64,000 nt of DNA, taken from the NCBI GenBank assembly GCA_051294905.1, contig CM119371.1, positions 13,888,001 through 13,952,000 on the forward strand, in the 5' to 3' direction. The notes under the pieces are model-generated. The model was given only the letters and a program-made list of their open reading frames with translations, ran no database searches and was not told the origin of the DNA. Position 1 is the stretch's first letter, and each line of letters begins with the position of its first letter. The translations under genes and the position numbers were made by a program. Source of the stretch: Botryllus schlosseri. Taxonomy: Eukaryota. Below, piece by piece: positions 5,512 to 63,889 of this stretch.

Positions 5512-7326
5512 TTATGTAGTCCCATCATCAGCAATCGGATCTGATGGTGTGGCTGGTGATTCCCACGTCTTGAAATCATCCGACCATTCAAAGGCAGCTT
5601 TCTTACGAATGAGTTTCACCAATGGCTCTGCAATGGTTGAAAACTGGTCCATGAATCTTCGATAATAGTTTGCCGTGCCGAGGAACGCTTGAACATCCTT
5701 GAGATTTTTCGGCACTGGCCAATCCTTCACAGCAGAAACTTTGTCATCACTACACTTGAGACCATCTGGGCAAATCACATGTCCCAGGTACTCTACCTCC
5801 TGGTAAAACAGTTTGCATTTTTTAGGCTTAAACTTAAGACCAGCGTCACGAATTCGCTTGAAAACATCTTCCAGATTGCAGAGTGTTTGGTCAAAGTTCT
5901 CCCCATACGCCAAAATGTCGTCCATGAAGGCAAGGCATTTCTTCCACAAGAGTCCATCAAGTAACTTCTCCATCATTGCCATGAACGTGGCAGGCGCATT
6001 ACACAAGCCAAAGCAAAGGACTGTCCACCGAAATTGCGAATGCCCAGGTACGCTGAATGCAGTTTTGTCTCGGTCACTTGGATTCAGGGGAACTTGCCAA
6101 AAACCGGATTCAAGATCAAGGGTACAATACCATTTTGCCCCACCCAGAGAATCCAGGATATCATCAATGCGGGGCAGAGGGTGGGCATCCTTTACCGTGA
6201 TCGTATTTAATTTCCGGAAGTCGGTGCAGAAACGGTACGTGTTATCCCGCTTTGGAACCAGAACAATCGGCGCGTTGTACGGGCTTTGGGCCTTCTCGAT
6301 AACACCCAGTTTTTCCATCTTTTCGATCTGCTCACCCACAATTTCTCGTGCCTTCCAACTCAAACGTCGCGGGGGCACTTTAACTGGTACCGTAGAAGAT
6401 AGCTCAATTTTGTGCTCAATCAAAGTGGTATATCCCAATTTTCCATCAGGCCCCGTGAATATATCCTGATACTTGATGAGAAGATCTCTTAACTGTTGTC
6501 GCTGTTGTACATTCAAGTGGTCTGGCTCTTCTACGAGGTGTCGCAGATGGTCCGGCAGATCCAAGCACGGATCGACTTCCACGGTGTCAGGCGCCTCCAC
6601 AGACCCACAAGTCGCAAGGGGCACTAAAGAGCCTACTCGTTCCCCAGCAGGGATTACAATATCATTTTGAGATAGGTTTATAAACATCACAGGCACCTCA
6701 TTACATGTAGGATCGACCAAACCGGACAACACACGCAAACCACGATTATCATACTGGCTCTCAAACACAGGTGACGATTCAACCACACCACACTGTGAAA
6801 TGGACGGCAACCAAGGCCCACTCACTGCACCCATGACAGCTCTTTCACTCCACTTAGGAACTATTATCTGTTTCTGAGTTATAACACCACAACAGGACAC
6901 CGACAGCTGTTGCAATATAACATTTTGTCCATGCAAACTCATCATTCCTTTACCCATGTACAAAACAGCATCATGCTTCTCCATAAAATCACACCCTAAC
7001 AAGCCATATGGCGCACCCAGACGAGCAATCACAACCTCTTGTTGTGCACAAAAATCACCAATACGTAGGGTCAACACCACTGTGCCATATAGCTCTAAGG
7101 GGCCACCAGAAGCAGTAACAAATGGGATATCACATGGTTTCAAATCAGTTATATCATACAGTCGAGTGTACAGATCATAGTCTAGGAAGGTACGGGGACT
7201 GCCCGAGTCTACCAAAAGTTTAGCCGACAGGCTGTCATTCACCGATGCAACGGTGTACCAGCTAGATGTGAGCCGAAGCGCACAAACAAAATTCATAAGT
7301 CTTTCCAAATCCTGGTCCATATCCAT
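5512..7326 (-). CDS. pol: Ty3/Gypsy Pol, truncated: aspartic protease plus reverse transcriptase, no RNase H or integrase
   Basis: Protease LLVDSGS. RT motifs FCTDFRKLN, LDLESGFWQV, FGLCNAPATF, FMDD, YLGHVI. Homology breaks off after FEWSDD. The frame is open upstream to the gag overlap. Confidence 0.9.
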   Translation of the reverse strand: MDMDQDLERLMNFVCALRLTSSWYTVASVNDSLSAKLLVDSGSPRTFLDYDLYTRLYDITDLKPCDIPFVTASGGPLELYGTVVLTLRIGDFCAQQEVVIARLGAPYGLLGCDFMEKHDAVLYMGKGMMSLHGQNVILQQLSVSCCGVITQKQIIVPKWSERAVMGAVSGPWLPSISQCGVVESSPVFESQYDNRGLRVLSGLVDPTCNEVPVMFINLSQNDIVIPAGERVGSLVPLATCGSVEAPDTVEVDPCLDLPDHLRHLVEEPDHLNVQQRQQLRDLLIKYQDIFTGPDGKLGYTTLIEHKIELSSTVPVKVPPRRLSWKAREIVGEQIEKMEKLGVIEKAQSPYNAPIVLVPKRDNTYRFCTDFRKLNTITVKDAHPLPRIDDILDSLGGAKWYCTLDLESGFWQVPLNPSDRDKTAFSVPGHSQFRWTVLCFGLCNAPATFMAMMEKLLDGLLWKKCLAFMDDILAYGENFDQTLCNLEDVFKRIRDAGLKFKPKKCKLFYQEVEYLGHVICPDGLKCSDDKVSAVKDWPVPKNLKDVQAFLGTANYYRRFMDQFSTIAEPLVKLIRKKAAFEWSDDFKTWESPATPSDPIADDGTT

Positions 7327-7329
7327 AAG

Positions 7330-7371
7330 AGCAGCGCCATCGGACCCATGGTCTGCTATGGCATGTTTAAA
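7330..7371 (-). other. -1 programmed ribosomal frameshift signal (gag-pol)
   Basis: U-UUA-AAC heptamer in gag phase (7371-7365), 7-nt spacer, then stem-loop AGCAG-A-CCAT...ATGG-CG-CTGCT (7357-7330). The -1 frame is open into pol. Confidence 0.7.
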
Positions 7372-8681
7372 GAATTGCCCGGTTGGTGTGGCTCATGTTC
7401 GCCGGTGACTGGCGGAACACCATCTCTATCTCTATTGGGACACGAAACTAGAAGGTGACCCAACTGGCCACAGTAAGCACAATGGGAATTTGGGCAGTTT
7501 TTGTGAATGTGTCCAGTCACTCCACAGTTATGGCAAGGTCCATACCCAAACGTTACTCTTCTACGATAGGGAGGGCTTCTAGGCCTACTCATCGGTGGTG
7601 GATTTCTGGCAGTCACTAGGTTGCTAACCAGGTCAATCAGCTTGTCAATTTTCGATTCCATCTCATTATCACGCTTGCCTACTGCAAGACGTTCATCGCC
7701 ATTTTTTGGTTGTAGACTTACAGGAGCCACAACTGGTTTACTAGTTTCGAACAATTGACTGTTAGGCGGTCCATCAACAGAGAAATACAAATCTGCCGAA
7801 GCAACTAGTTCATCAAGGTTACTTGTTTTCATCAGCGTTAGCTGTCGGCGAAGGTTAATATCACCAAGACCATTAATAAACTGTTGACACACAAACTCAT
7901 CACGAGCTGCAGAATTCATACGTGGAAAAGCCTTCAAGCTAAGCGTAGCCAGAACTGATGCGAATTCTGTTGGGGATTCTCCCAATTTCATTTTGCGTTT
8001 GTTAAATTCAGTACGGCTCAAGGTTTCCATACCCCATGGGATGTAGCGCTTCTTCAATTGGGCAATTACACGATCAATATCCCGACGGCAATCAGCCGAC
8101 ATTTGTGCAAGCACTTGCAAAGCGTTACCACGTAAGCTAGCATTAAGCCTAGCACAAGCAGTTTGTTCGTCCCATCCGTTGGCCAATGTCACCGCATCAA
8201 AATGGCATAAATAATCGCTAATGGGCATATTCACACCATCAAATGGTTCCAGTTTAATAACACCAACAGCGGGTTTGGGGATGCCATGACTAGATGGAGT
8301 GGGGCGTACAGAATTGCTACGAGTAACACGCACTCTATCATTTACATACTGTGGTTCTGGAGACATCACACCAGTTTTACTGTCAGTCATATCGACAAAC
8401 TCCTCCATGCCACCATTATCATTACTGTCAAACACACATCCACTCGCATTCGGAGCCGCAGACATACTCTCACCTCCCAAACTTTGTACAATGGTTAATA
8501 CACGACTGAGGGTACTGTTTTGGGCTTCCACCATTTCGTCGATCCGGCGATGAACCCGCTCCAACTCTGCTCGCAGATACTCATTCTCTTCACGCAATTG
8601 ATCCATGCCGATACCGGTATTCTTGTTGCCCGATCGCTGGTTGTTAACTTGAAGACTGGTGTGCTCGCCAATTGTGTGCAT
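7356..8681 (-). CDS. gag: Ty3/Gypsy Gag with two CCHC zinc knuckles
   Basis: 441-aa open ORF with a capsid-like region (LEPFDG...YLCHFDAV...NGW) and knuckles CHNCGVTGHIHKNC and CAYCGQLGHLLVSC, directly upstream of pol. Confidence 0.87.
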   Translation of the reverse strand: MHTIGEHTSLQVNNQRSGNKNTGIGMDQLREENEYLRAELERVHRRIDEMVEAQNSTLSRVLTIVQSLGGESMSAAPNASGCVFDSNDNGGMEEFVDMTDSKTGVMSPEPQYVNDRVRVTRSNSVRPTPSSHGIPKPAVGVIKLEPFDGVNMPISDYLCHFDAVTLANGWDEQTACARLNASLRGNALQVLAQMSADCRRDIDRVIAQLKKRYIPWGMETLSRTEFNKRKMKLGESPTEFASVLATLSLKAFPRMNSAARDEFVCQQFINGLGDINLRRQLTLMKTSNLDELVASADLYFSVDGPPNSQLFETSKPVVAPVSLQPKNGDERLAVGKRDNEMESKIDKLIDLVSNLVTARNPPPMSRPRSPPYRRRVTFGYGPCHNCGVTGHIHKNCPNSHCAYCGQLGHLLVSCPNRDRDGVPPVTGEHEPHQPGNSLNMP

Positions 8682-9383
8682 TTAGTGACACTAAATCGCG
8701 CAAAGCGCGAAAAGAAATTGAAAACTGTTGGAAAAAGTTTCCAGAAAATACGCTATGATTTATGTTCACTTGCAAACTAGTTTTGAGCCCTTTTCAAGCT
8801 CGGCCCCTCTCCAATTGGGCGGATTAGGGTACCCCAGTTACTGTCCTGTACAAAATGAATGTTTCGAAAACGAATGATCGCGCAAACTGCGCTGTTCAGC
8901 GACGAGTCAGTTCGTATCTGTTCTGTACTTGTCGCCTTCAACATTGTTTCTTGAAATTAAGGCTTAAAATTGTAATATACCTGGCGGACGCGCAGGGATG
9001 GCGCGGACCGGCGGTTGAGAACCACTGTTCTAAATCATGTTGGAATCAACTGATTCATTCGCGAGGTGGCGCTAATCCACCGCACTTACTCAAAGTTTTC
9101 GTTTGTAAACACTGAACGCATAGCAACAGTATTGAATGGAATCGATGAAAGAAGCTTCTTAGAATAACAGTTCTATTGTATTATTGTTGAATGCCTTTCA
9201 TTTAGCACTGTTCAGTTTCCACCTTTAGTGCAGCTGACTTTCCCTCACGTCAAAGTCGTGACCTTGATTAGTATTATGATTATGTTAACTACCGTAATCA
9301 TCTTTACTGCAATGACAGTGTTACTATAAGTAATAAATAATCGTGGTCAAATTTGATATATATTGTATAGTTGGTTGTTAATC

Positions 9384-11013
9384 ATGGTGCAGATTGCGTG
9401 TCCAAGTGTGGAGAAACATGCCGTGAAGATGATGGAAGAATTACATCGAATGAAGCGAGATAATGAACAATGTGATTTCATAATTCAAGTAGGAGATGAT
9501 GTCTATTACACTCACAAAAATGTATTGTCGTCTGGTTGTGATTATTTCAAAACAATGTTGAAGCAAGACACTAAGGAGAGTCGTGAAGGAAAAGTTGTTT
9601 TCAAAGATGTGGATTCCGAGTGTGTGAAAAGTTGCATCGATTTCATATATATATTCCGGTAAATTTGATATGACTGATGACAAGATGAATGATCTTCTTC
9701 ATGTCGCGATCATGATGCAGCTGGAAGATGTGAAACAGGCAGTATCTGATATATTGGAGCAATCAATTACTGTAGAGAATTACTTTTCGACAACACAAGC
9801 TGCCGATATGTACGGACTGGATGCCGTCTCTACGCCATGTAGAGTATTTTTTCAGGAAAAGATCATGGAAATATCAATGCAACCTGAATTTGGAAATATC
9901 AAAAAGAAGGACATCCTAGGTTTTGTGACGTCAAAATCAAAATTATGCGAGGAAGAAAAGCTAACGTTATTACTCAATTGGGTCGAGAAAAACCGTGAAA
10001 ATGAGAAACATTTGCGCAACTGTCTTGAAGTGATCAAGTTAGACAAAATTTCGCCAGCATTTTTAGAACATCTTCTGGAATCAAACCTAATTATCAGCAA
10101 TAACTTTGGATTGTACAAGTTGATCAATGGACATCTTCTGAAAGCTTCAAAAAGATTGGAGGAATCGAGAGAAGAAATTGACTCTGGTGATTTGATAATT
10201 CTTTTTGATGATGACGAGGATTGTATCCGATCCCTCAATCCAATAACCGAGAAAGTAGAGAAGTTCCATGATGAAAAGTTCGAGCATTTGCAACTTTTCG
10301 AGACAATTTTTCTGGACTCATACATTTATGTTTTATGTAAGGATAAATCTGTTCATCGACTCGATTGCCGAAGCAAAAATTCAAAATGGGAAAGAATGAA
10401 AGATATGATTTGTGACCATGGAAGATTTCCTCGATCTGTTTCATGGTCAGGATCAATATTTGTTGTTGGAGGAAGTTTTCCCAAAGCAACAAATGATGTG
10501 GAAACATTTACTTCTTCCCTAAATCAATGGTCTCAACTGCAAAACAAACCTACAGCAATTAGTGATGCAAGTATTGTATCATTGGATGATTCCATTTATT
10601 GTATTGGTGGTATGGGAGAAGATTGTGTCAAAGTTTCTTCATTCTGCAGATTCACTCCATCCTCATCAGAGTGGGTTGATCTCGAGCCAATGAGATATTC
10701 TGTGTCGGAATGTGGTGTTGTTGCAGTTGACAAAAAGATTTTTGTGTTGGGTGGTTGCAGCGGAGAGATCGAAGTCGACTACGTATCATGTTACGATGTT
10801 ACTTCAGCTCAGTGGACTTTATTGTCTTCTATGATTTCTGGTCATGGCATTTCTTCTGCTCATCACATTGACAACTGGATTTATGCAGTAGGATACGGAG
10901 AAATCTCTGATGCTATTGAAAAGTATGATGTCTCAAAAGACAATTGGATTATAGTGAAACCAAAAGTTGATCGATGTTTTACAATTTATGAATCCACATT
11001 TGTAAAAATATAG
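9384..11013 (+). pseudogene. BTB-BACK-Kelch gene A1, frameshifted in the BTB domain
   Basis: ORF 9363-9662 (CDFIIQVG, HKNVLS, CDYFKTML) and ORF 9670-11013 (BACK plus Kelch GG repeats) are joined by a +4 (AT)5 expansion at ~9645-9654, where intact paralogs have (AT)3. Confidence 0.9.
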
Positions 11014-12946
11014 ACTGTACTGATCTAAGACATGAATATAAATATTTTTTATCACAATTTAAATTTTCCAGTTGTCTGTTCTATCAATGCTACAATTGAT
11101 CATGCTATTTCCATCACAATTACATTGTAATTTGTTCATTTTGTTGTATCGAATCATTGCAATAGTGACTTTACTTATGTGGCTTTTTATCAGACCATGT
11201 TTACTTTTAACTTTATAATTCAATTCGCCACTTCTCGCTTCAGTTTTTCAGATTCTGTCGAACGTAACGTAATTTGGGGTGAATTTGTATAATTTATGAA
11301 TTGAATTGAAATGCTGTCATGAAATTTTGTGGAAATACACTTCATAACCCAGCCTACCAAAGTGCAATGGGGTGACATTGGAAATAGTTTGACTTACTTT
11401 GTTCTTTACTCAATATGTGTATTGTAAATGATATTTGATGACTTGAGAATTCGATTCCACAATTCCTGCGTGGCCGATCTCAATAGTGAATGATTTTTTA
11501 AACTCGTATCCCGCCATTTCCGTTATAAATAGTCCAAATCATCCAGTATATGGAAATTTCAATGAGAGTGAATTGTCTCGTTTCCTTGTTTAGATGCATT
11601 CGATGATTGTTAACCGATTGGCACAGGCGGGTTTTTTCAAAAACTCTGCTTCACTTTACAAAACTGAAAAACACGACCTCAACGGGATGCGAAACCAACA
11701 AGCATACATCGTTGGATTCAAAATGTCAACGCATAACCAACTACGCCACGAAGCAAGACGAGTGCAATCAACCGCGCGTGTATACAATCCAGAAGACAAG
11801 AAAACGTTGTTCTAAACATGTACATGTTTTGCTTACTTCCTTATAGAGTCCACAACGTATACCTAGTGCGAATAAGTACGTGCTATTCACTGCGACATAG
11901 ATAACATCTTTCGAACAAGCCATGAGTGACTGCTTTTGCCTAACTTACGTGATCTATACTATCAAAAAACTGTGGATCGTTTCACCATAATCCACTGTCT
12001 GACTCGTGGGTCAGCGGGGTTGCAGGTTTATAACTTATTGTGTATGATTGTGAACCCTATTGATTGCAATTCCAGTCATTATAACCAGGGCTTTGGAGCA
12101 GCCGTAAATTTGCATTGCTCCAGCTCCGGCTATCATACAGTAGCTCCGGCTCCGGCAATTTACCTATCTACCAACTGGTCTACGCAATGATTTGTTTTGA
12201 AACATTAAAATTGGTTCATATTGGCACGTACATTAATGTCTGACAATTTTCGATTCAGGCGAATGATAGCCTTAAGCCATTGACAATCAGTAATGAGGAT
12301 TCAGAATATAGTTGTATGAAAATAATCAGTGAATTTCCTTATCAGAACCCATTTATCCGAGGTATTCATTTTTATGACACATTTATTTACAATTTCTTAT
12401 TTCCAGGTGTCTCTTCTGAAAGACGAGGAAGATGTAAAGTTCGAACAATGAAGGTTGCATCCCACGTGTGTCAATAACCGTAAGTAGTTGTAGAAATAGA
12501 AGAGTTCGGAACAAAGTCATCCATCTCGGAAAAAAGTTACAAAGTCAAGTGGTGGGCAAACTAGAGCCAGCGGGTCACATCTGACGCGTGACAATAATTT
12601 GTGGGACGGGCGAAGGCATCGGCAATTGCAATAAAAATATTGAGAAATATTTTATTGTTGGTGTAATAGCCCATCCTCAGGACCAACGTATTTCGAAACG
12701 TTTCGGTTGCTAAACACCCAAAAAATCAAAACTCAAATAACTTAGTTCTGATCACAATTGTGATTTTAGATTAGAACTCCTACTTTCAGTGCTGTACTTG
12801 GAAAAAGCGGTTCAGGAATGCGTTTTAGATTCGTCCTCTATGTGCAGTTAGGTGCAAATCACTCATAAATTCGGTCTCAACTCATCCATAATGAGTAGGG
12901 TGATTTTTTTGGGTTGCCCGACATATGAGCATGCGACACAATGAAA

Positions 12947-13250: not shown

Positions 13251-13483
13251 CTTAATGTTCCCCCTACCCACCCACGGCATGTAAAACTTCCCTATCAAAA
13301 GAGACCCGCAAAATAAAATAATAAGTCCCGTGTCAAAATGCGAATTTGGAATCGCTTTCGTCTCACAAAAGGATATATTCTTTTAGTTCGTCTGATACGT
13401 GTAAACGCGATTTCAATATGTGGAGCAATGACAACCTTTATCGCTTTACCGCAATTTTCAAAGCTTTTCACACAAATCTATAT

Positions 13484-14030
13484 GGTCACATGCTCAAGTG
13501 TCGCATGCTCAAATGTCGCATACTCAAGTCTAATATGCTCAAGTGTCGCATGCTCAAATGTCGCATGCTCAAGTGTCGCATGCTCAAATGTCACATACTC
13601 AAGTGTCGCATGCTCAAATGTCACATACTCAAGTGTCGCATGCTCAAATGTCGCATGCTCAAGTGACGCATTCTCAAGTGACGCATGCTCAAGTGTCGCA
13701 TGCTCAAGTGTCTGCATATCCACGTGTCGCATGCTCAAGTGTCTGCATGTAGACGGGTCGCATGCTCAAGTGTCTGCATGTAGACGGGTCGCATGCTCAA
13801 GTGTCTCATGCGTACGTGACCCCATGCTCATGTGCACATTTGCTCTTGTGTCCCCATGCCCATGTGTCCATATGCGCATGTGTGCCCATGCTCTTGTGTA
13901 CCCATGCTCATGTGTCGTTAAGGCTCATGTATCGCATGCTCATGTGTCACCATGCTCAAGTGGCACTTACTAAATTGTCACCATGTTGATGTGTCCCTAT
14001 GCGTGTATCCATGCTCGTGTGTCCCTATAC
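13484..14030. repeat. 15-bp minisatellite (TGTCGCATGCTCAA[A/G]) decaying rightward, resuming at 14642-14673 and 18357-18490
   Basis: Head-to-tail repeats visible directly. They generate the artefactual MLKCR and SHAQV ORFs. Confidence 0.9.
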
Positions 14031-14034
14031 TCAA

Positions 14035-14641
14035 TAGGGTTGTTCAAAAAAAATTTTTTTTCCAAATCTCACTCGCCTACTGATTAAATCGTCAGGTTGT
14101 CCAAGAAAACGATGCACACCAAATTTGACTCAATTCCAACCAGTCAAGGCCGTGCAATCTTGAATTGAAATTTTTAATTTATTAAAAAAAATTTAAAAAA
14201 AAAATTTCTCAAATTTTTCTGTCAACCCCATGAAATTGTTGAGCTGTCTTCAAAGACGATGCAAAACGAATTTGAGTCAATTCCGACTAGTAGAAGCGGA
14301 ACTATTTGAGTTTTTCGTTGATAATCCCCGGATCAAGAATAATCCGACAAATATCAACGAAAAACGCGAATAACTCCGCTTCTGCAAGTCGGAATTGACT
14401 CAAATTTGTTTTGCATCGTCTTTGAAGACAGCTCAACAATTTCATGGGGTTGACAGAAAAATTTGAGAAATTTTTTTTTTTAATTTTTTTTAATAAATTA
14501 AAAATTTCAATTCAAGATTGCACGGCCTTGACTGGTTGGAATTGAGTCAAATTTGGTGTGCATCGTTTTCTTGGACAACCTGACGATGTAGTCATTAGGC
14601 GAGTGAGATTTGGAAAAAAAAGTTTTTTTTGAACAACCCTA
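14035..14641. mobile_element. 607-bp near-perfect palindromic MITE with hATm-like termini
   Basis: Termini TAGGGTTGTTCAAAA and TTTTGAACAACCCTA. Arms of ~280 bp. Perfect 8-bp TSD ATACTCAA (14027-14034, 14642-14649). Confidence 0.95.
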
Positions 14642-14673
14642 ATACTCAAGTGTCCCCATGCTAATATGTCCAC

Positions 14674-23056: not shown

Positions 23057-24664
23057 CTATATCTTCACTATTGCAGATCCACAGATACCGAAAGATTGAT
23101 CTCCTTCCATGGTGATGCTACACCATCTTTTCTTCACTAAATCATATTTTTCAATGATATCAAGCTGAAAGTCAAACGTATCCAGTACAAAAATCCAATT
23201 GCCGATGTGATAAGCGGTGTTGCGTCCATGATCAAAATTCATAGATGACAATGAAGTCCATTGAGCTGAAGTAACATCGTAACATTCTACATTGTTGATA
23301 TATCCTCCACTCAACCCACCTGTCACAAATATCTTTTGATCGATTGCAACCGCACCGCATCCACAAGTAGGATATCTCATTGGTTCGAGGATAACCCACT
23401 CTAATGAGGATGGAGTAAATCTGTAGAATGAAGAAACTTCAAAGCCATCTTGTGTTTCACCTCCGATACAATAGATTGAATCATTCAATGATACAAGACT
23501 TGCATCACAAATTGCCGTAGGCAAGTTTCCCTGTGGAAACCATTGATTGACTGAGGGGTCGAATCTTTCCACATCATCCGTTACTAATTTTTCGCTTCCT
23601 CCAATGAGAAATATGGAAGCGCAAAATAACACTGAGCTAGGTAGCCCACCGTGGTCACAAATCATATCTTCCATCCTTTGCCATTTTGCGTTTTTTCTTA
23701 CAACATCGAGTCGATGAACTGATTTATTGTCGCATAAAATATAAATATACTGGCGATAAGAAATCATTGAGAAACGATCTTCATTGACCATCTTTTCGTT
23801 GTGAAACTTGGTTATTTTCTCTGTTCTTGGATTAAGGGATAGAATACAATTATCGTAATCATCAAATATAACCATTAATTCTTTTCTCTCAATTTGTTCA
23901 ACTGAAAATTCCGGAAGATGTCCGGTAATCAACTTGTACAAGTGCGAGTCGTTTCTGATAACAGGGTAAGTTTCTAGAAGTTGTTGTAAAAATGCAGGAG
24001 GAATTCCATCACACTCGATCAATTCTAAAAATTCATGCAAATATTCCTTCTTTTCACATGTCTCGATCCACCTGAGCGATAACTCTAGTTTTTCTTCTTC
24101 CAATAACTTCCGATTTGAGACCTTTAAAGAACTTAAAACGTCAGCTTTTTCAACACTGCCAAATCCAGCTTGGCTTGCAATTTCCATGATATTTTCTTGT
24201 AAAAACATTCGGCATCTCAAAGCAACATCGACCAGCCCATAAATATCAGCAATATTTCTTGTAGAGAAGTAGTTGTCAACAGTGATTGATTCCGCCAAAG
24301 TATCAGATATTGCATGCTTTACGTCTTCCAACTGCAGAATGATTGCGACGTGAAGAAGTTCAATGTTTTTCCCGTCAGGAATCTCAACTTTACTTGAATA
24401 TATAAAATCGATGCAATTTTTCATACACTCGGAATCTACATCTTTAAAAACGATTCTTCCTTCACGACTTTCTTTCGTGTCATGCTTTAGCATAGCTCTG
24501 AAATAATCCGAACCAGCCGACAACATATTTTTGTGGGCGTGATAGACATCATTCCCGACTTGAACTATGAAATCACAATGATCTTCATCTTGTTTCATTC
24601 GATGTAAGTGCTCGAGCATCTTCACTGCATGTTTCTCGACGTCTTGACAAACAACTTGCACCAT
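23057..24664 (-). CDS. BTB-BACK-Kelch protein B1 (KLHL-like), intact, 535 aa from the first ATG
   Basis: Single uninterrupted ORF. BTB (CDFIVQVG, AHKNMLSAGSDYFRAML), BACK (TVDNYF, IMEI, EEEKL), Kelch repeats IFLIGG, IYCIGG, IFVTGG with YD...W. Confidence 0.95.
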   Translation of the reverse strand: MVQVVCQDVEKHAVKMLEHLHRMKQDEDHCDFIVQVGNDVYHAHKNMLSAGSDYFRAMLKHDTKESREGRIVFKDVDSECMKNCIDFIYSSKVEIPDGKNIELLHVAIILQLEDVKHAISDTLAESITVDNYFSTRNIADIYGLVDVALRCRMFLQENIMEIASQAGFGSVEKADVLSSLKVSNRKLLEEEKLELSLRWIETCEKKEYLHEFLELIECDGIPPAFLQQLLETYPVIRNDSHLYKLITGHLPEFSVEQIERKELMVIFDDYDNCILSLNPRTEKITKFHNEKMVNEDRFSMISYRQYIYILCDNKSVHRLDVVRKNAKWQRMEDMICDHGGLPSSVLFCASIFLIGGSEKLVTDDVERFDPSVNQWFPQGNLPTAICDASLVSLNDSIYCIGGETQDGFEVSSFYRFTPSSLEWVILEPMRYPTCGCGAVAIDQKIFVTGGLSGGYINNVECYDVTSAQWTSLSSMNFDHGRNTAYHIGNWIFVLDTFDFQLDIIEKYDLVKKRWCSITMEGDQSFGICGSAIVKI

Positions 24665-29400: not shown

Positions 29401-31019
29401 ATGGTGCAGGTTGTTCGTCTAGATGTGGAGAAACGAGCACTGAAGATGGTGGAGGAATTATATCGAATGAAGAAAGATAAGGATCATTGTGATTTCATAG
29501 TTCAAGTCGAAAATGATGTCTATCACACCCACAAAAATGTATTGTCGGCTGGTTCGGATTATTTCCAAGCCATGTTGAAGAATGATACAAAAGGGAGTCG
29601 CGAAGGAAGAGTTGTTTTAAAAGATGTTGATTCCAACTGCGTGAAAAATTGCATCGATTCTATATATTCCAGTAAGTTTGAGATTCCTGATGGAAAAATA
29701 ATTGAACTTCTTCACGTCGTAGTCATGATGCAGTTGGAAGATGTAAAGAATGCTGTATCCAATATTTTGGAGGAATCAATTACTGTTGAGAATTACTTCT
29801 CTACAAGAAATGTTGGTGATATTTATGGACTAGTCAATGTCTCTTATAGATGCACAATATTTTTACAACAGAATATTATGGAAATCGCAAACCAAGCTGG
29901 ATTTGGAAGCATGGAAGAAAATGACTTTATTAGCGTTTTGAAGTCGACAGCAACGGAATTATGGGAAGAAGAAAAAGTAGAGTTATCGCTCAAGTGGATC
30001 GAGGGATGTGAAACTTTTAAAAATATTTGTATGAATGTCTCGAATCGATTGACTTCTATAGAATATCTCCGACATTTTTGCAACATCTGGAAACTCACCC
30101 CATCATCAGAAATGACTGCAAGTCACACGAGCTGATCAGAAATCATGTTATTGGAGGGTCAGATGAAGCTGTAAATCAAAATAAATCATTAATTCTTTTT
30201 GATTGGGAAGGAGATTGCATCCGATCCTTTAATCCGATATCTGAGAAAACAAGTAAGTTACAAAATGCCAAGTTTACGCATTTTCAAGGATTTGAAACGA
30301 TTTTACTAGACTCGTATATTTACATTTTCTGCATAAATAATTCAGTTCATCGACTCAATTTTCAAAGAAAAAATTCAGAATGGCAAAAGATGGAAGGAAT
30401 GATTTGAGACCATGGGCAGTTACCTTGCTCTGTGTCATTGTCCGGATCCATATTTGTCATTGGAGGAAGTTATGGCACAGAAACAAATTATGTCGAAAGA
30501 TTTGACCCTGCAGTAAATCAATGGTTTCAACTGCAAAACAAAAGTACAGCAACTAGCGATGCATGTCTTGTAGCATTAAATGATTCCGTCTACTGTATCG
30601 GAGGTGTGCAAAATGGTTTCGCAGTTTCCTTACTCTGCAAATTTACTCAATCTTCATCAGAGTGGGTTGACCTGAAACCAGTGAAATATCCTGTGGCTGT
30701 TAATCGCGGCGGTGTTGTTGCAGTTGATCAGGAGATAATTGTGATCGGTGGCTGGAATGATTATGAGACTATCAATAACGTAGAGTGTTACAATGTAAAC
30801 TCAGATCGGTGGACTTCATTGTCATGGACATATACATATCGTGATTTAGCTACTGCAGCTTACGTAACCGGCAAATGGATTTTTGTAGTAGACAATACTG
30901 GCGACTCTATTGATATTGAGAAATATGATTTATCAAGCCACAAATGGCATAACGTTAATTTGAAATCACATGAATATCTCAGGGTTTGCGGGTTCGCAAA
31001 GGTGAATGTATTTGTATAG
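29401..31019 (+). pseudogene. BTB-BACK-Kelch gene C1 with a -1 frameshift and a nonsense codon
   Basis: One base shorter than C2 at ~30012-30025. TGA at 30405-30407 replaces the Cys of ICDHG. Otherwise collinear with the paralogs. Confidence 0.9.
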
Positions 31020-44798: not shown

Positions 44799-46412
44799 CT
44801 ATATCTTGACTATTGCCGATCCGTAGCTACTGAAAGATTGATCTTCTTCCATTTTGATGCTACACCATATTTTGTTCACTAAATCGTATTTCTCAATGAC
44901 ATCCCGTTCAACGACAAACGTATCCAGTACAAAAATCCAATTGCCGATGTGATAAGCGGCATTGCGTCCATGCTCAAAATTCATAGATGACAATGAAGTC
45001 CATTGAGCTGAAGTAACATCGTAACATTCTACATTATTGATAGTATCGTCTCCCCTCCACCCACCGGTCACAAAAATTTTTTGATCTATAGCAACCGCAC
45101 CACATCCACTAACAGGATATCTCATTGATTCAAGGATAATCCACTCTGATGAGGATGGAGTAAATCTGTAGAACGAAGAAATTTGAAAACCATCCCGTGT
45201 TTCACCTCCGATACAATACACAGAATCATTCAACGACACAAGACTTGCATTACAAATTGCCGTAGGCGAGTTTCGCAGCGGAAACCATCGATTTACGGAG
45301 GGGTCAAATCTTTCCACATCATTCGTTACTAATTCTTCGCTTCCTCCAATGAGAAATATGGATCCGCAAAATAACACGGATCTAGGTAGCCCACCGTGGT
45401 CACAAATCATATCTTCCATCCTTTGCCATTTCGCATTTTTTCTTCCAATATCGAGTCGATGAACTGATTGATTATCGCATAAAATATAAATATACCGCTG
45501 ATAAGAAATTACGGAGAAACGATCTTCTTCGGTAATCTTTGCGTTGTGAAACTTGGTTATTTTCTCAGTTATCGGATTAAGGGATAGAATAGAATTTTCT
45601 TCATCATCAAAAATAACTATTAATTTTTTTCTTTTGATTAGTTCAGCTGACGATTCTGGAAGATGTCCGGTAATCAACTTGTACAAGTTCGAGTCATTTC
45701 TGATAACGGGGTAAGTTTCGAGAAGTTTTTGTAAAAAGGCAGGAGAGATTCCATCACACTCGATCAATTCGAGAAATTCGTGCAAATATTCCTTCTTCTT
45801 TTCACATGTCTCGATCCACTTGAGCGATAACTCGAGTTTTTCTTCTTCCAATAACTTCCGATTTGCGGCCTTCAAAGAACTTGAAACATCACCTTTTTCA
45901 ACACTTCCAAATCCAGCTTGGTTTGCAATTTCCATGATATTTTCTTGTAAAAACATGCGGCATCGCAAAGCAACATCGACCAGCCCGTAAATATCAGCAA
46001 TATTTCTTGTAGAGAAGTAGTTGTCAACAGTGATTGATTCCGCCAAAATATCAGATATTGCATGCTTTACGTCTTCCAGCTGCAGAATGATTGCGACATG
46101 AAGAAGTTCAATGTTTTTCCCGTCAGGAATCTCAACTTTACTTGAATATATGAAATCGATGCAATTTTTCATACAATCGGAATCTACATCTTTAAAAACG
46201 ATCCTTCCTTCACGACTTTCTTTCGTGTCATGCTTCAGCATAGCTCTGAAATAATCAGAGCCAGCCGACAACATATTTTTGTGGGCGGGATAGATATCAT
46301 TCCCGACTTGAACTATGAAATCACAATGATCTTCATCTTGTTTCATTCGATATAATTCCTCCATCATCTTCACTGCACGTTTCTCGACGTCTTGACAAAC
46401 AACCTGCACCAT
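44799..46412 (-). CDS. BTB-BACK-Kelch protein B2, intact, 537 aa
   Basis: Uninterrupted ORF. Close paralog of B1 with the same BTB, BACK and Kelch motifs. Confidence 0.95.
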   Translation of the reverse strand: MVQVVCQDVEKRAVKMMEELYRMKQDEDHCDFIVQVGNDIYPAHKNMLSAGSDYFRAMLKHDTKESREGRIVFKDVDSDCMKNCIDFIYSSKVEIPDGKNIELLHVAIILQLEDVKHAISDILAESITVDNYFSTRNIADIYGLVDVALRCRMFLQENIMEIANQAGFGSVEKGDVSSSLKAANRKLLEEEKLELSLKWIETCEKKKEYLHEFLELIECDGISPAFLQKLLETYPVIRNDSNLYKLITGHLPESSAELIKRKKLIVIFDDEENSILSLNPITEKITKFHNAKITEEDRFSVISYQRYIYILCDNQSVHRLDIGRKNAKWQRMEDMICDHGGLPRSVLFCGSIFLIGGSEELVTNDVERFDPSVNRWFPLRNSPTAICNASLVSLNDSVYCIGGETRDGFQISSFYRFTPSSSEWIILESMRYPVSGCGAVAIDQKIFVTGGWRGDDTINNVECYDVTSAQWTSLSSMNFEHGRNAAYHIGNWIFVLDTFVVERDVIEKYDLVNKIWCSIKMEEDQSFSSYGSAIVKI

Positions 46413-53122: not shown

Positions 53123-54736
53123 ATGGTGCAGGTTTTATGTCTAGATGCGCAGAAACGTGCAGTGAAGATGATGGAGGAATTATATCGAATGAAGCAAGAT
53201 CAAGATCATTGTGATTTCATAGTTCAAGTCGGAAATGATGTCTATCACACCCACAAAAATGTATTGTCGGCAGGTTCGGATTATTTCAAAGCCATGTTGA
53301 AGTATGATACAAAAGAGAGTCGCGAAGGAAGAGTTGTTTTTAAAGATGTCGATTCTGAGTGCGTGAAAAATTGCATCGAGTCTATATATTCCAGTAAGTT
53401 TGAGATTCCTGATGGAAAAATAATTGAACTTCTCCACGTCGCTATCATGATGCAGTTGGAAGATGTAAAGAATGCTGTATCCAAAATTTTGGCGGAATCA
53501 ATTACCGTTGAGAATTACTTCTCTACAAGAAATGTTGGTGATATTTATGGACTGGATTACGTCTCTTCAAGATGCAAAATATTTTTGGACAAAAATATAG
53601 TGGAAATCGCAACCCAAGATGGAGTTAGAAGCATGGGAAAAAATTACTTTCTCAAAGTTTTGAAGTCGACATATATGGAATTATGGGAGGAAGAAAAGGT
53701 AGAGTTATCACTCAAGTGGATCGAGGGATGTGAAAATAGAATGAAATATTTATATGAATGTCTCGAATTGATAGACTTTTACAGAATCTCTCCGACGTTT
53801 TTGCAACATCTAGAAATTAACCCCATCATCAGGAATTACTGCAAGTCACACGAGCTGATCAGAAAACCTCTCCAGGAAGGGTCAGATGAAGCGGTAAAAC
53901 AGAATGAATTGATGATTCTTTTTGATTGGGAAACAGATTGCATCCGATCATTTAATCCGATTTCTGATAAAATAAGTAAGTTACACAGTGCCAGGTTTAG
54001 GCATTTCGATTTATTCAATACAATTTTACTAGACTCGTATATTTACATTTTATGCCGAAATAATTCTTTTCATCGACTCAATTTCTGAAGAAAAAATTCA
54101 GAATAGCAAAAGATGGAAGGACTGATTTGTGACCATGGGATGTTTCCATGCTTGATGTCATTGTCTGGATCCATATTTGTCATCGGAGGAAGTGATGCAA
54201 GAGAAACAGACTATGTGGAACGATTCGACCCTGCAGTCAATCATTGGTTTCAACTGCAAAACAAACCTACAGCAACTAGCGATGCACGTCTTGTAGCATT
54301 GAATGATTCTATTTATTGTATCGGAGGTCGGGAAAATGGTTACCAAGGCTCCTAACTCTGCAGATTTACTCCATCTAAATCAGAGTGGTTTGACCTCGAA
54401 AAGATGAGGTATCCTGTACGTGTGAATCGCTGCAGTGCTGTTGCAGTTGATCAGGAGATATTTGTCATCGGTGGGGGGAATGGAGATGAGACCATCAATA
54501 ACGTAGAGTGTTACAATGTTACTTCAGCTCAGTGGACTTCATTGTCATGGACATATAAATGTCTTTGTTGCGTTGCTGCTGCTTACGCAACTGGCAAATG
54601 GATTTTTGTAGTAGACCAGTCTTACGACTCTACTGATATTAAGAAGTATGATTTATCAAACAACAAATGGTATAACATCGATCTGAAAGTACATGAATAT
54701 CCCACGTTGTGTGGCTTTGCAAAGGTCAATGTATAG
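53123..54736 (+). pseudogene. BTB-BACK-Kelch gene C2 with three in-frame premature stops
   Basis: ORF pieces 53114, 54113 and 54404 share one frame. TGA 54086-54088, TAG 54104-54106 and TAA 54353-54355 sit at codons that are sense in the paralogs. Confidence 0.92.
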
Positions 54737-55343
54737 TAGAGTGGTTCAAAAATAACGTATTGATCAGATTTTGGCGGCTATAAACATACTGTTAAATTGT
54801 CTGGTTGGCTAAAAAAAACTTTCACACCAAGTTTGGTTCCATTTCAATGAGTGGACGTGAAGCTATAAGAGTTTGTAAATTTTGAATTTATTCTATTTTC
54901 AAATTTAACCCTTGACATTGGTAAGTTATCTACAAAAACTAAGCATAACTAATTTGAGTCAATCCAGCTCGTTGAAGTGCAGCTATTAAAAGTTTTTCAT
55001 TAGTAATTCTTACATTTTCCACAGTAAATACTGTTAGGGATAGCCTACTATTTTTTTAAATCCAAGATTTTCAACTCCGATAATTCTGCATCTACTAGTT
55101 GTAATTATGACAAATTTGTTGTGTTTCTTTCTATTGGACGGATATATAATTCAATGGGGTAAACAGTCGAGTTCTCTGGAAAATAATAGTATATTTTTAT
55201 AGTAAATTCTATTGTAAATTCAAACTTTTCCAATACTAATAGCTTCACTTCTGCATGTTGGAATTCAGTCTAGTGAGTCAACCTAACAATTTTAGCTAAT
55301 AGCTGTGAAAATCTGAAAAAAAAAGTTATTTTGAACAACCCTA
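54737..55343. mobile_element. 607-bp hATm-related MITE inserted at the C2 stop codon
   Basis: Termini TAGAGTGGTTCAAAA and TTTTGAACAACCCTA. Flanks ATGTATAG and ATGGATAG match at 7/8. Empty site after C1 (TTGTATAGTCTCAGAGG at ~31012). Confidence 0.85.
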
Positions 55344-57325: not shown

Positions 57326-58965
57326 ATGATGCAAAATGTATGTTTGGATGCAGAGAAGCACGCAGTGTCTATGATGTCTGAATTGCATCGAATGAAGCAA
57401 GATAACAATCATTGTGATTTCATAATTCAAGTTGGAGATGATATCTACCGTACCCACAAAAATGTATTGTCGGCCGGTTCCGCATATTTCAGAGCAATGT
57501 TAAAATACGACACAACAAAGGGTCGCGAAGGAAAAGTTGTTCTCAAAGATGTGGATTCTCAGTGCGTGAAAATTTGCATCGATTTTATATATATTCCGCA
57601 AACTTCCAGATTCCTGATGGAAAAATCATAGACCTTCTTCATGTTGCAATCATGATGCAGTTGGAAGGTGTGATGCAAGCCTTATCCAATATTTTGGCGG
57701 AATCAAATACCGTTGAGAATTACTTCTCAACCAGAAATGTTGGTGATATTTATGGACTGGCGGATGTTTCTTCGAGATGCAGAATATTTTTAGGAGAACA
57801 CAACATGGAAATCGCAAACCAAGATGGATTTGGAGCTCTTGAAAAATATGACCTTCTCAGTCTTATGAAGTCGGGAAAATTGAAATTATGCGAAGAAGAA
57901 AAGCTTATGTTATCCCTCAAGTGGATCGACAAATGTCAAAGCAATAGCGAATGTTTGCAAGAATATCTCGAAGTAATCAAGTTCGATCAAATCTCACCGG
58001 TGTATTTGCAAGGGGTTTTAGAAACTCACCCCCGTATAAGTAACGATTTCGAGCTGTACAAGTTGATAAATAGACATATTCGTAAAGCTTCGGTCGAGGC
58101 AAAAGAAGAAAGTGATTCCGATAAATTGATAATTCTTTTGGATTTGGGCCGAAAACGGCTGCGATCCTTCAACCCAATAACCGAGGAAGTAGAAAAGTTC
58201 CATGATGCAAAGATTAAGTTCTCGTCGCCTTTTACAGCGACTTCCCTTGACTCGTACATTTATGTCGTATGTGAGAAGAAATCTGTCTATCGTCTCAATT
58301 TTCTTGACAAATATTCGAAATGGGAAAAAATGGACAGTATGATTTGCAACCATGGTATCTTTCCTCGCTTGATTTGTGCGACAGGATCCATATTCGTCAT
58401 TGGAGGAGGCTATCCTACCGCAACGACTGATGTGGAAAGATTTGACCCATCTGTAAATCGATGGATTCAACTGGAAAATAAACCATCGGCAATTTGTGAT
58501 ACAAGTCTCATATCATTGGATGATTCAATATATTGTGTGGGAGGTGGAGGACAAGATGGCGCTCAAGTTTCTGCATTCTGCAAGTACACTCCATCGTCAT
58601 CAGAGTGGGTTGACCTCGAACAGATTAAATATCCTGTGGCTAGGTGTGGTGTTGTTGCTGTTGATCGAAAGATATTTGTTATCGGTGGGTGGAATAGAAG
58701 AGCGAGTCTCAATAACATGGAATGTTACGACGTTACTTCGGCACAGTGGTCTTCGTTGTCGTCGATGAATTCTTATTGCTGTTGGCCTTCCGCGTATCAA
58801 ATCGGCAACTGGATTTATGCAGTAGATTGGAACGGCTATGTTCGTATTGAGAAGTATGATTTATCGCACAAAAAATGGTATAACGTGGAATTGAATGGGG
58901 ATCAATCTATCTTGGGCTTCGGATCTGCAATTGTGTGGGTAAAGTCACAGAGGATGTCAAGGTAG
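57326..58965 (+). pseudogene. BTB-BACK-Kelch gene A3, frameshifted in the BTB domain
   Basis: +2 (AT)4 expansion at ~57587-57594 separates ORF 57308-57631 from ORF 57562-58965. The rest of the gene is open. Confidence 0.9.
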
Positions 58966-62281: not shown

Positions 62282-63889
62282 ATGGTGCATGTTGCTCGGT
62301 ATGATGTCGAGAGGCGTGCAATGAAAATGATGGAGGAATTACATCGAATGAAGCAAGATAAGGCTCATTGTGATTTCATAATTCAAGTTGGAAATGATGT
62401 CTACTACGCCCACAAAAATATTTTGTCGGCCGGTTCGGATTATTTCAAAGCCATGCTGAAGCATGACACAAAGGAGAGTCGAGAAAATAGGGTCGATTTC
62501 AAAGATGCTGATTCTGAATGTGTGAAAAATTGCATCGATTTTATATATTCAAGTCAATTTAAGATTCCGGATGGAAAAATTATCGAACTTCTTCACACTG
62601 CAATCATGATGCAGTTGGAGGATTTAAAGAAGGCAATATCCAATATTTTAGCGAAATCAATTAATGTGCAGAATTACTTCTTCACAAGAAAAGTTGCTGA
62701 TATATATGGACTGGTTGATGTCACTTCGAGATGCAGACAATTTTTACACAGAGATAATTTGCACATCGTAGAGCAAGCTGAATTCGGAAGCGTGCAAAAC
62801 TTCGACCTTCGACCTGTTTTGAAGTGGGCTGAATCCAAATTATGGGAGGAAGAAAAACTAGAGTTGTCGCTTCAGTGGATCGAGACATGTGAAAATAAGA
62901 GGGAATATTTGCATGAATGTCTCGAATTGATCGACTTTGAAAGAATATCTCCGGCAATATTGGCACGTCTTCTAGAAACTAACCCCATTATCAGGAATGA
63001 TTCCAAGTCGTACGAGTTGATTAACAAACATCTTCTGGAAGCGCAAGATGGAATGGTGAACAAAAAAGAATTGATAATTATTTTTGATAATGACACAGAT
63101 TGTATTCGATCCCTTAATCCTACAACCAATAAAATAACCAAGTTCCACAATGCAAGGTGTATGTATATGAATTGTCTCGCAACGATTACTCTGAACCCGC
63201 ATATTTATATTTTATACCATCGTGAATCTGTTCATCGGCTTGATTTTTTAAGAAAAAATTCCAATTGGGAAAAGATGGAAGATATGACATGGAACCATGG
63301 ATTTTACCCTCCGTCAGTTTCGTTGTTGGGATCAATATTCGTTATTGGAGGAAGTTATTCTGTAAAAACTAATGTTGTTGAAAGATTTGACCCCTCAGTA
63401 AATCGATGGTTTCAACTGCAAAACATGCCTACAGCAATTTGCGCTTCAAATCTTGTATCAATGAACGATTCAGTGTATTGTATTGGAGGTTATCTCGATG
63501 GCGTCCAAGTTGCTTCATTCTACAGATTTACACCATCCTCATCAGAGTGGGTTGAACTCGAACCAATGAGATATCCAGTGCATGGGAGTGGTGCTGTTGC
63601 AGTTGATCAAAAGATTTTTGTGATCGGCGGTTTGACTGGAACAGAGCAACTCGACAACGTAGAATGTTACGATGTAGCTTCAGCTCAATGGACTTCGTTG
63701 ACATCGATGAATTTTAAACATGGTTTCAATTCTGCTTACCAGACCGGCAATTGGATTTTTGTTGTAGATGAGCGTGCCCGCTCTAATTTTATTGAGAAGT
63801 ACGATTTATTGAACGAAAAGTGGTATTGCATAGGAAAGTTAACAGATCGATCTTTGAGACTCCGCGGATCAGCAATGGTGAAGGAATAG
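62282..63889 (+). CDS. BTB-BACK-Kelch protein E, intact, 535 aa
   Basis: Uninterrupted ORF with BTB (CDFIIQVG, AHKNILSAGSDYFKAML), BACK and Kelch repeats (IFVIGG, VYCIGG, IFVIGG). Confidence 0.95.
   Translation: MVHVARYDVERRAMKMMEELHRMKQDKAHCDFIIQVGNDVYYAHKNILSAGSDYFKAMLKHDTKESRENRVDFKDADSECVKNCIDFIYSSQFKIPDGKIIELLHTAIMMQLEDLKKAISNILAKSINVQNYFFTRKVADIYGLVDVTSRCRQFLHRDNLHIVEQAEFGSVQNFDLRPVLKWAESKLWEEEKLELSLQWIETCENKREYLHECLELIDFERISPAILARLLETNPIIRNDSKSYELINKHLLEAQDGMVNKKELIIIFDNDTDCIRSLNPTTNKITKFHNARCMYMNCLATITLNPHIYILYHRESVHRLDFLRKNSNWEKMEDMTWNHGFYPPSVSLLGSIFVIGGSYSVKTNVVERFDPSVNRWFQLQNMPTAICASNLVSMNDSVYCIGGYLDGVQVASFYRFTPSSSEWVELEPMRYPVHGSGAVAVDQKIFVIGGLTGTEQLDNVECYDVASAQWTSLTSMNFKHGFNSAYQTGNWIFVVDERARSNFIEKYDLLNEKWYCIGKLTDRSLRLRGSAMVKE

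What the first reader, a model, noticed from the sequence alone, without database searches (positions are those of the whole stretch)
9640..9660. Recurrent (AT)n slippage switch in the BTB F-I-Y-S codons (A1, +4)
Six paralogs have (AT)3 at the codons for F/S-I-Y-S. A1 has (AT)5 and A3 has (AT)4, so there are two different-length frameshifts at the homologous site, and the rest of each gene is stop-free. Inference: a mutational hotspot that could act as a reversible on/off contingency locus. In A1, one more AT unit would restore the frame with two extra residues.
Basis: partly seen in the sequence, partly recalled or inferred. Interest (0 to 1): 0.7.

Follow-up and report, generated by a model that had tools for sequence, protein, structure and literature searches.

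The report
Two young frameshifts at one AT repeat
Two copies of a hugely expanded sea-squirt gene family were each knocked out recently and independently by extra AT units at the same short repeat, which looks like ordinary gene decay at a slippery spot and not a built-in on/off switch.

Summary
The window has eight intronless BTB-BACK-Kelch genes. Six carry (AT)3 across the Ile-Tyr codons ATA-TAT of the BTB motif C-I-D-F-I-Y-S. Copy A1 has (AT)5 at 9645-9654 (+4) and copy A3 has (AT)4 at 57587-57594 (+2). Each has this single frameshift and an otherwise open frame.

In the whole 495-Mb genome, 96 family copies with the same flanks carry (AT)3. Only A1 and A3 are longer, none is shorter, and none carries an in-frame (AT)6.

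A tree of the 5' half, tract masked, puts A1 and A3 in deeply separated subfamilies whose nearest relatives have (AT)3. The two insertions are therefore independent. Both lineages show the same purifying selection as their intact sisters, and about 450 stop-free codons put each frameshift late on its branch.

Three other slippery tracts gave 1 length variant in about 228 copies against 2 in 98 here (p = 0.22), so a special hotspot is not shown. The tracts are shorter than the cut-off used for known phase-variable dinucleotide repeats.

Public reads were swamped by paralogues and could not settle allele state.

Verdict: recent slippage null alleles or young pseudogenes in a birth-and-death family. 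A reversible switch is not supported. The scan's first readers had already noted the A2 chimera and birth-and-death evolution on this same window.

The parts
9384..11013 (+). Gene copy A1 (c09k): an intronless BTB-BACK-Kelch gene disabled by one +4 frameshift
   Evidence: tblastn gives two HSPs in different frames. Pfam finds BACK and Kelch in the 3' part.
9645..9654 (+). (AT)5 tract in A1, across the Ile-Tyr codons of the C-I-D-F-I-Y-S motif. It has two units more than the family's (AT)3.
   Evidence: It is the only (AT)5 in this context in the genome.
9384..9662 (+). Truncated A1 reading frame: 92 residues of N-terminal BTB ending ...IDFIYIFR, then TAA at 9660-9662
9655..11013 (+). A1 downstream frame: 452 stop-free codons covering the rest of BTB, BACK and the Kelch propeller. 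The first ATG is at 9670.
57326..58965 (+). Gene copy A3 (c57k): a BTB-BACK-Kelch gene disabled by one +2 frameshift
57587..57594 (+). (AT)4 tract in A3, one unit more than (AT)3
   Evidence: It is the only (AT)4 in a family copy in the genome.
57595..58965 (+). A3 downstream frame: 456 stop-free codons, with the same C-terminus as its intact sister L004
34343..35953 (+). Intact copy A2 (c34k) with (AT)3. It is a chimera: the 5' ~800 nt resemble A3/L004 and the 3' ~800 nt resemble A1.
   Evidence: Sliding identities, tree, Pfam BTB + BACK + Kelch
23057..24664 (-). Intact copy c24k with (AT)3
44799..46412 (-). Intact copy c46k with (AT)3, 91% identical to c24k
62282..63889 (+). Intact copy c62k with (AT)3
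29401..31019 (+). Pseudogene c29k. It keeps (AT)3 but has a 1-nt deletion near 30015-30024 and an in-frame stop.
53123..54760 (+). Pseudogene c53k. It keeps (AT)3 but has three in-frame stops.

Best explanation
ATA-TAT, the Ile-Tyr codons of the conserved BTB motif C-I-D-F-I-Y-S, happen to form an (AT)3 proto-microsatellite. In two paralogues of a very large, tandemly arrayed BTB-BACK-Kelch family, replication slippage or tandem duplication added AT units. The family consists of putative Cullin-3 substrate adaptors. A1 gained two units, in one step or two, and A3 gained one.

Each insertion shifts the frame after residue 89, in the middle of the BTB fold. The product then lacks the rest of BTB, BACK and the Kelch propeller, so these are null alleles. 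The two events are independent and recent. They sit in a local cluster where gene death is common: 4 of 8 copies are disabled. This is ordinary birth-and-death evolution.

Shown here: the sequence states, the independence of the two events, past purifying selection, and recency. Inferred: slippage as the mechanism, loss of function, and that the alleles are real and not consensus errors.
For: - Tract states and single frameshifts.
- Family assignment: Pfam finds BTB, BACK and Kelch_1 in intact copies. The best solved relatives are KEAP1 and KLHL2/3/12/20, and 'cidfiysakf' aligns to KEAP1 'liefaytasi'.
- Genome-wide census with identical flanks: 96 copies with (AT)3, one with (AT)4 (A3), one with (AT)5 (A1). 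The mismatch-tolerant extra hits (L033, L035, L036) are not family genes.
- Independence: in an IQ-TREE of the 5' 780 nt with the tract masked, A1 groups with L002/L003 (99/98) and A3 groups with A2 and L004 (100/99), on opposite sides of a 100/100 split. All of those relatives carry (AT)3. The flanks also differ (TTC...TCCGGT against TTT...TCCGCA).
- Selection: lineage-specific nonsynonymous/synonymous counts are 1.06-1.56 for A1 and 1.25-1.69 for A3. Their intact sisters give 0.87-1.83, and the neutral expectation is about 3.9. Pairwise dN/dS is 0.35-0.47, as for intact pairs.
- Recency: about 450 stop-free codons are expected (P > 0.05) only if less than 0.04-0.055 neutral substitutions per site have passed, with a median near 0.01. 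dS to the nearest intact paralogue is about 0.28.
- AT runs are generally over-represented: ATATATAT occurs 11 times in the window against 1.7 expected.
- Cluster decay: c29k and c53k are dead by other lesions, and neighbour L002 has a stop.
Against: - Reads could not confirm the tract lengths locus-specifically, because contigs from hundreds of paralogues were laid on the stretch. Consensus error or heterozygosity therefore remains open.
- The same call shows contigs of run X1 that differ from the assembly by 1-nt homopolymer indels. Either the reads or the assembly has some indel noise.
- Two hits at one 6-nt site among about 98 copies, both in one 64-kb cluster, is more than a uniform model predicts. 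The model gives 0.019 for uniform 10-nt bins. Something beyond chance, such as a locally raised slippage rate or relaxed selection, must contribute.
- Loss of function is inferred, not measured.
Confidence: 0.7

Rival explanations
1. Assembly or consensus artefact: the true sequence is (AT)3 in one or both genes, and the extra units are errors of the reads or of polishing.
For: Contigs of run X1, the best holder and possibly the source sample, differ from the assembly by 1-nt indels in short runs at 9242, 9901, 10202, 10425 and 11045. One contig in X5 and one in X10 show a 4-nt deletion at 9645.
Against: - The errors would have to be +4 and +2 in a 6-nt tract. That is unusual for any platform, and it did not happen in the 96 other copies with the same sequence.
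- No X1 contig shows a 2- or 4-nt deletion at 9645, although X1 does reveal a 2-nt indel at 9369.
- The X5 contig, at depth 148, is probably a short contig shared by paralogues. X10 is another species label.
Confidence: 0.08
2. Contingency-type switch: the tract is kept because reversible slippage toggles individual family members on and off in the germline, and selection favours this variability.
For: There are two independent hits at the homologous site with intact downstream frames. Two of the control tracts show no variants. The family has the look of a fast-evolving recognition family (one search found 547 candidate hits; dN/dS is 0.3-0.5).
Against: - The tracts are 3-5 units long, against a cut-off of 6 or more for phase-variable dinucleotides.
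- Only 2 of 98 copies vary. No (AT)2 and no in-frame (AT)6 'revertant' exists anywhere.
- Codon use at the site is no more conserved than the gene average, 0.85 against 0.84.
- The excess over the controls is not significant, p = 0.22.
- Short-tract slippage rates in an animal germline are far too low for switching within lifetimes (established knowledge, not tested here).
Confidence: 0.05
3. The frameshifted genes still make a useful product. One route is reinitiation at the ATG at 9670, 7 nt after the A1 stop, giving a BACK-Kelch protein without a BTB core. The other is ribosomal frameshifting.
For: In A1 an ATG lies just downstream of the premature stop and opens a 447-codon frame with BACK and Kelch domains. 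The downstream frames are intact.
Against: - Reinitiation after a 92-codon ORF is inefficient in eukaryotes (general knowledge).
- A3 has no such ATG close by.
- A1 would need a +1 shift and A3 a -1 shift, so no common recoding signal is possible (sequence).
- RNA reads at 99% identity or more were very few: 6 of 148 laid.
Confidence: 0.05
4. Single origin: one expansion arose once and was spread between A1 and A3 by gene conversion, then changed in length.
For: Recombination is active in this array: A2 is a chimera and A1 is a mosaic of L002-like and L003-like segments.
Against: The immediate flanks differ between A1 and A3 on both sides. The two genes are only 74-83% identical around the site. 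A2, which shares its 5' half with A3 and L004, carries (AT)3.
Confidence: 0.03

Closest known systems
Simple-sequence contingency loci (phase variation) of bacteria such as Haemophilus, Neisseria and Campylobacter
   Same: A short tandem repeat lies inside a coding region, and changes in its length move the reading frame in and out.
   Different: Known phase-variable tracts are long (cut-off of 6 or more dinucleotide units in PMC6321876) and vary within populations at high rates, with both ON and OFF states seen. Here ON is 3 units and OFF is 4-5. Only 2 of 98 copies vary, no revertant or other length states exist, and the organism is an animal.
Birth-and-death evolution of tandem multigene families, with frequent pseudogenes (as described for olfactory receptor and immune receptor families; from general knowledge)
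   Same: There is a large tandem array, mosaic or chimeric copies from unequal crossover, and a high share of disabled copies (4 of 8 here). The pseudogenes are young and still look selected.
   Different: Two of the deaths hit the same 6-nt tract independently. This is a small local bias, not a new process.
Birth of microsatellites from proto-repeats, and frameshifts at coding repeats (for example coding mononucleotide runs hit in mismatch-repair-deficient tumours; from general knowledge)
   Same: Expansion occurs in whole repeat units at a very short pre-existing repeat and gives frameshift null alleles.
   Different: This is germline, it lies in a paralogous family, and the repeat is AT dinucleotide units of only three copies.
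KLHL/KEAP1-type BTB-BACK-Kelch Cullin-3 adaptors
   Same: The domain order BTB-BACK-Kelch is the same. The motif hit by the frameshift aligns to KEAP1 'LIEFAYTASI'.
   Different: The family is intronless and expanded to hundreds of copies in this genome. The nearest database proteins are only 40-52% identical. Its targets are unknown.

Membership tests
BTB-BACK-Kelch (KLHL-type) proteins | N-terminal BTB/POZ domain | tested here: met
   PF00651 scores 72-76 bits in the intact copies A2 and c24k. A1 and A3 encode it only across the frameshift.
BTB-BACK-Kelch (KLHL-type) proteins | BACK domain followed by a Kelch-repeat propeller | tested here: met
   PF07707 and PF01344 (with related Kelch families) are found in A2, c24k and the A1 downstream frame. 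Solved relatives are KEAP1 and KLHL2/3/12/20.
BTB-BACK-Kelch (KLHL-type) proteins | Binding to Cullin-3 and substrate recruitment | not testable with these tools
   No assay is available here, and no complex prediction was run.
Simple-sequence contingency (phase-variable) locus | The repeat tract is long enough for high-frequency slippage (6 or more dinucleotide units in the cut-offs of PMC6321876) | tested here: not met
   The tracts are 3, 4 and 5 units long.
Simple-sequence contingency (phase-variable) locus | Tract length varies between individuals or cells at the same locus, with both ON and OFF states | tested here: inconclusive
   The laid reads were dominated by paralogue contigs. X1 shows no deletion at 9645. 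The single contigs in X5 and X10 that carry (AT)3 cannot be assigned to this locus.
Simple-sequence contingency (phase-variable) locus | A range of length states, including in-frame revertants, across homologous loci | tested here: not met
   Across the family there are 96 copies with (AT)3, one with (AT)4 and one with (AT)5, and none with (AT)2 or (AT)6.
Simple-sequence contingency (phase-variable) locus | The repeat is more mutable than comparable tracts in the same genes | tested here: inconclusive
   The site gives 2 variants in 98 copies. The controls give 0 of 92, 0 of about 85, and 1 of 51. Fisher p = 0.22.
Young frameshift pseudogene or null allele | A single disabling lesion in a gene whose lineage shows past purifying selection | tested here: met
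   There is one frameshift in each gene. Branch N/S is 1.1-1.7 against about 3.9 under neutrality. The age bound is t < 0.04-0.055.
Young frameshift pseudogene or null allele | Absence of functional product or expression | tested here: inconclusive
   Bulk RNA run X23 gave only 6 reads at 99% identity or more. Most RNA reads came from paralogues.

The most novel reading that the evidence does not exclude
The AT tract could be a recurrent germline on/off polymorphism in a hypervariable recognition family of a sea squirt. Null and working alleles of individual BTB-Kelch adaptors would segregate in populations. They would be lost by slippage and regained by slippage or by gene conversion from neighbouring copies. 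Individuals would then differ in which adaptors they express.
Probability: 0.07. Interest if true: 0.6.

Novelty: new member of a known kind. Interest (0 to 1): 0.22.

Why it matters
If the frameshifts are real, they date two very recent gene deaths. They also show how a chance codon pair (ATA-TAT) creates a weak spot shared by about a hundred paralogues. That is useful for annotating this family: A1 and A3 should be flagged as frameshifted, not split into two genes. It also helps in estimating gene turnover in a lineage-specific expansion of ubiquitin-ligase adaptors. The finding does not reveal a new regulatory mechanism. It would become interesting only if population data showed many length alleles or revertants.

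Tried and rejected
- **Reads.** Contigs from hundreds of paralogues were laid, with depths in the thousands, so the tract length at A1 could not be genotyped.
- **Full census of frameshift positions.** I replaced it with pattern censuses at the AT site and three control tracts.
- **Extra pattern hits.** The (AT)2 hit on C10 (L033) and the (AT)4 hits on C9 and C16 (L035, L036) are not family genes: they give no tblastn match and lie in non-coding context.
- **Pattern.** It was poorly designed and could not match A3. The exact patterns cover that case.
- **Nucleotide-level constraint.** I rejected the idea that the ATA-TAT codons are specially constrained. Majority-codon use is 0.85 near the site against 0.84 gene-wide.
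- **Retroelement upstream of A1.** I could not show that it disrupted the promoter. All paralogues share only about 100 nt of upstream homology.
- **Protein search.** It gave three unnamed relatives at 40-52% identity, and the contig look-up returned no DNA. Neither told me the species.
- **Paper searches.** They found nothing on this family in ascidians.

Full report
**What is there.** The window holds eight copies of an intronless gene of about 1.6 kb (tblastn). Intact copies carry BTB, BACK and Kelch domains (Pfam). Their best solved relatives are KEAP1 and KLHL2/3/12/20. According to another agent's note, the genome is a sea squirt's (I did not verify this). It is 495 Mb in 219 contigs, and the family is huge: 547 first-look candidates, mostly in tandem arrays on contig C1.

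The eight copies in the window are:

| Copy | Coordinates (strand) | State |
|---|---|---|
| A1 (c09k) | 9384-11013 (+) | +4 frameshift at the AT tract |
| c24k | 23057-24664 (-) | intact |
| c29k | 29401-31019 (+) | pseudogene: 1-nt deletion plus a stop |
| A2 (c34k) | 34343-35953 (+) | intact |
| c46k | 44799-46412 (-) | intact |
| c53k | 53123-54760 (+) | pseudogene: three stops |
| A3 (c57k) | 57326-58965 (+) | +2 frameshift at the AT tract |
| c62k | 62282-63889 (+) | intact |

**The observation.** At the codons for C-I-D-F-I-Y-S, six copies read ...GAT TTY/TCT ATA TAT TCN, which contains (AT)3. A1 reads GATTTC-ATATATATAT-TCCGG, with (AT)5 at 9645-9654. A3 reads GATTTT-ATATATAT-TCCGC, with (AT)4 at 57587-57594. 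A1 terminates at TAA 9660-9662 after 92 residues, and its other frame is open for 452 codons from 9655 to 11013. A3 terminates at 57629-57631, and its other frame is open for 456 codons to 58965. Neither gene has any other lesion. The one qualification is that two of the six (AT)3 copies (c29k, c53k) are dead for other reasons.

**Genome-wide state of the site.** I searched the whole assembly with the flanks held constant (TGYATYGAYTYY...TTC):

| Tract | Matches |
|---|---|
| (AT)3 | 96 places |
| (AT)4 | 1 (A3) |
| (AT)5 | 1 (A1) |
| (AT)2 | 1, on C10, not a family gene |

Allowing two mismatches adds only two non-coding, non-family hits. That search would also have caught an (AT)6 allele, and none was found.

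**Independence.**
- A2 is a chimera. Its first ~800 nt are 80-95% identical to A3 and to L004, the next copy just beyond the window. Its last ~800 nt are about 90% identical to A1.
- This layout fits an unequal crossover that duplicated an A-B-C block, as another first-reader note proposed.
- In a maximum-likelihood tree of the 5' 780 nt with the tract columns removed, A1 groups with L002 and L003 (support 99/98). A3 groups with A2 and L004 (100/99).
- These two groups lie on opposite sides of a 100/100 split. All of those relatives carry (AT)3.
- The bases on either side of the tract also differ between A1 and A3.

The two expansions are therefore separate events.

**Age and selection.**
- Pairwise dN/dS of A1 and A3 against their closest intact relatives is 0.35-0.47. 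That is the same range as intact-intact pairs, 0.31-0.48.
- Changes private to the A1 lineage give nonsynonymous/synonymous counts of 1.06-1.56, and those private to A3 give 1.25-1.69. Their intact sisters give 0.87-1.83. Random mutation would give about 3.9.
- Both genes were therefore under purifying selection for most of their history.
- Under neutrality, about 450 codons stay stop-free with P > 0.05 only for less than 0.04-0.055 substitutions per site (P = 0.5 at about 0.01). dS to the nearest intact paralogue is about 0.28.
- The frameshifts are thus recent, and they could still be segregating alleles.

**Is it a hotspot?**
- Each gene has on average 11.5 homopolymers of 5 nt or more and 5 dinucleotide repeats of 3 units or more. 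If all were equally slippery, two of the window's three frameshift indels would share a tract with probability about 0.17. Under a uniform model the figure is 0.019.
- I measured length variants at three conserved control tracts:

| Control tract | Length variants |
|---|---|
| A-run 12 nt upstream | 0 of 92 copies |
| (AG)3 run | 0 in about 85 family copies |
| 34-nt stretch with a T5-7 run and an A4 run | 1 of 51 copies (C1:15129531, +1) |

- The AT site gives 2 of 98. The difference is not significant (Fisher p = 0.22).
- ATATATAT is over-represented in the window generally, 11 against 1.7 expected. AT expansion may therefore be a general tendency of this genome.
- Codon use around the site is no more conserved than elsewhere, 0.85 against 0.84. 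Nothing suggests that the repeat is maintained for its own sake.

**Reads.**
- One lay was allowed. I laid four runs on 9200-11200 at 90% likeness.
- Depths of thousands show that contigs from many paralogues were laid. Reads clipped at 9650 that continue TCCGGCAAATTTGAG... are paralogue transcripts carrying (AT)3.
- In X1, the best holder and possibly the source sample, no contig has a 2- or 4-nt deletion at 9645. The same run does reveal a 2-nt indel at 9369.
- One X5 contig at depth 148 has the 4-nt deletion. So does one 399-nt contig of X10, which carries another species label and is about 95% identical. Neither can be assigned to this locus with confidence.
- X1 contigs also differ from the assembly by single-base indels in short runs, so there is indel noise somewhere.
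- RNA run X23 gave only 6 reads at 99% identity or more.
- The reads neither confirm nor contradict the tract lengths. An error of +4 and +2 at a 6-nt tract that is correct in 96 other copies seems unlikely.

**Mechanism and comparison.**
- The best reading is slippage or tandem duplication at a proto-microsatellite created by the ATA-TAT codon pair. It gives null alleles in a family that turns over by birth and death.
- The frameshift falls where KEAP1 has LIEFAYTASI. That is before the rest of BTB, BACK and the propeller.
- Bacterial contingency loci work through the same frame arithmetic, but this site fails their defining features. The tracts are below the cut-off of 6 or more dinucleotide units (PMC6321876). 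No spread of length states exists, and no variation is demonstrated at the locus.
- A programmed recoding reading is unlikely, because A1 would need +1 and A3 -1.
- Reinitiation at the ATG at 9670 is conceivable for A1 only.

**Verdict.** Recurrence at the site is real and independent. The hotspot is plausible but unproven. The reversible switch is not supported. I file this as a new member of a known kind, with low to moderate interest.

Noticed in passing
window 34343-35953 (A2), with 9384-11013, 57326-58965 and L004: A2 is a chimera: its 5' ~800 nt resemble A3/L004 and its 3' ~800 nt resemble A1. The gene order A1-B-C-A2-B'-C'-A3 fits an unequal crossover between an A3/L004-type gene and A1 that duplicated a block of about 24 kb. 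B and B' are 91% identical, and C and C' are 85.5% identical.
   Followed up: partly
window 29401-31019 and 53123-54760: c29k and c53k are a duplicated pair of pseudogenes. c29k has a 1-nt deletion in an A/T-rich stretch plus a stop. c53k has three stops. Both keep (AT)3.
   Followed up: yes
window 5512-8681 (-): These are retrotransposon ORFs: gag with a CCHC zinc knuckle (7356-8681) and aspartyl protease plus reverse transcriptase (5512-7326). They end about 0.7 kb upstream of the A1 start. No LTR pair was found in a quick blastn.
   Followed up: partly
G000:C1:15129531-15129565 (outside the window): A family copy has one extra base in an A-run (ACAAAAATAATATC where others read ACAAGAAAATATC). 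It is a probable frameshifted pseudogene at a different slippery tract.
   Followed up: no
window 9242, 9901, 10034-10036, 10202, 10425, 11045: Contigs of run X1 with no other mismatches lack one base relative to the assembly, mostly in short homopolymers. At 9242 this is the only X1 contig. The cause is either read error or residual consensus errors or heterozygosity in the assembly.
   Followed up: no
window 9356-9370: An (AT)4 run sits about 20 nt upstream of the A1 start codon. Next to it, at 9369, a 2-nt deletion is seen in part of the depth in both X1 and X5. This is a possible real indel polymorphism beside an AT repeat.
   Followed up: no
whole window: ATATATAT occurs 11 times against 1.7 expected from shuffles, and there are ten separate runs of 4 or more AT/TA units. 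AT dinucleotide runs are generally enriched here.
   Followed up: partly
L002 (G000:C1:13884765-13886384, just upstream of the window): This is the closest relative of A1 on that side. It has a premature TAA at about codon 22 in an otherwise full-length frame, so it is another young pseudogene in the same local cluster.
   Followed up: partly
window 9274-9384 compared with L002, L003, L005, L012: Homology between paralogues extends only about 90-110 nt upstream of the start codon. The shared promoter or 5'-UTR part of the duplicated unit is therefore very short.
   Followed up: partly
window 13338-17653 (+): Three ORFs of 211, 278 and 411 residues lie between A1 and c24k. None has a Pfam match.
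   Followed up: partly
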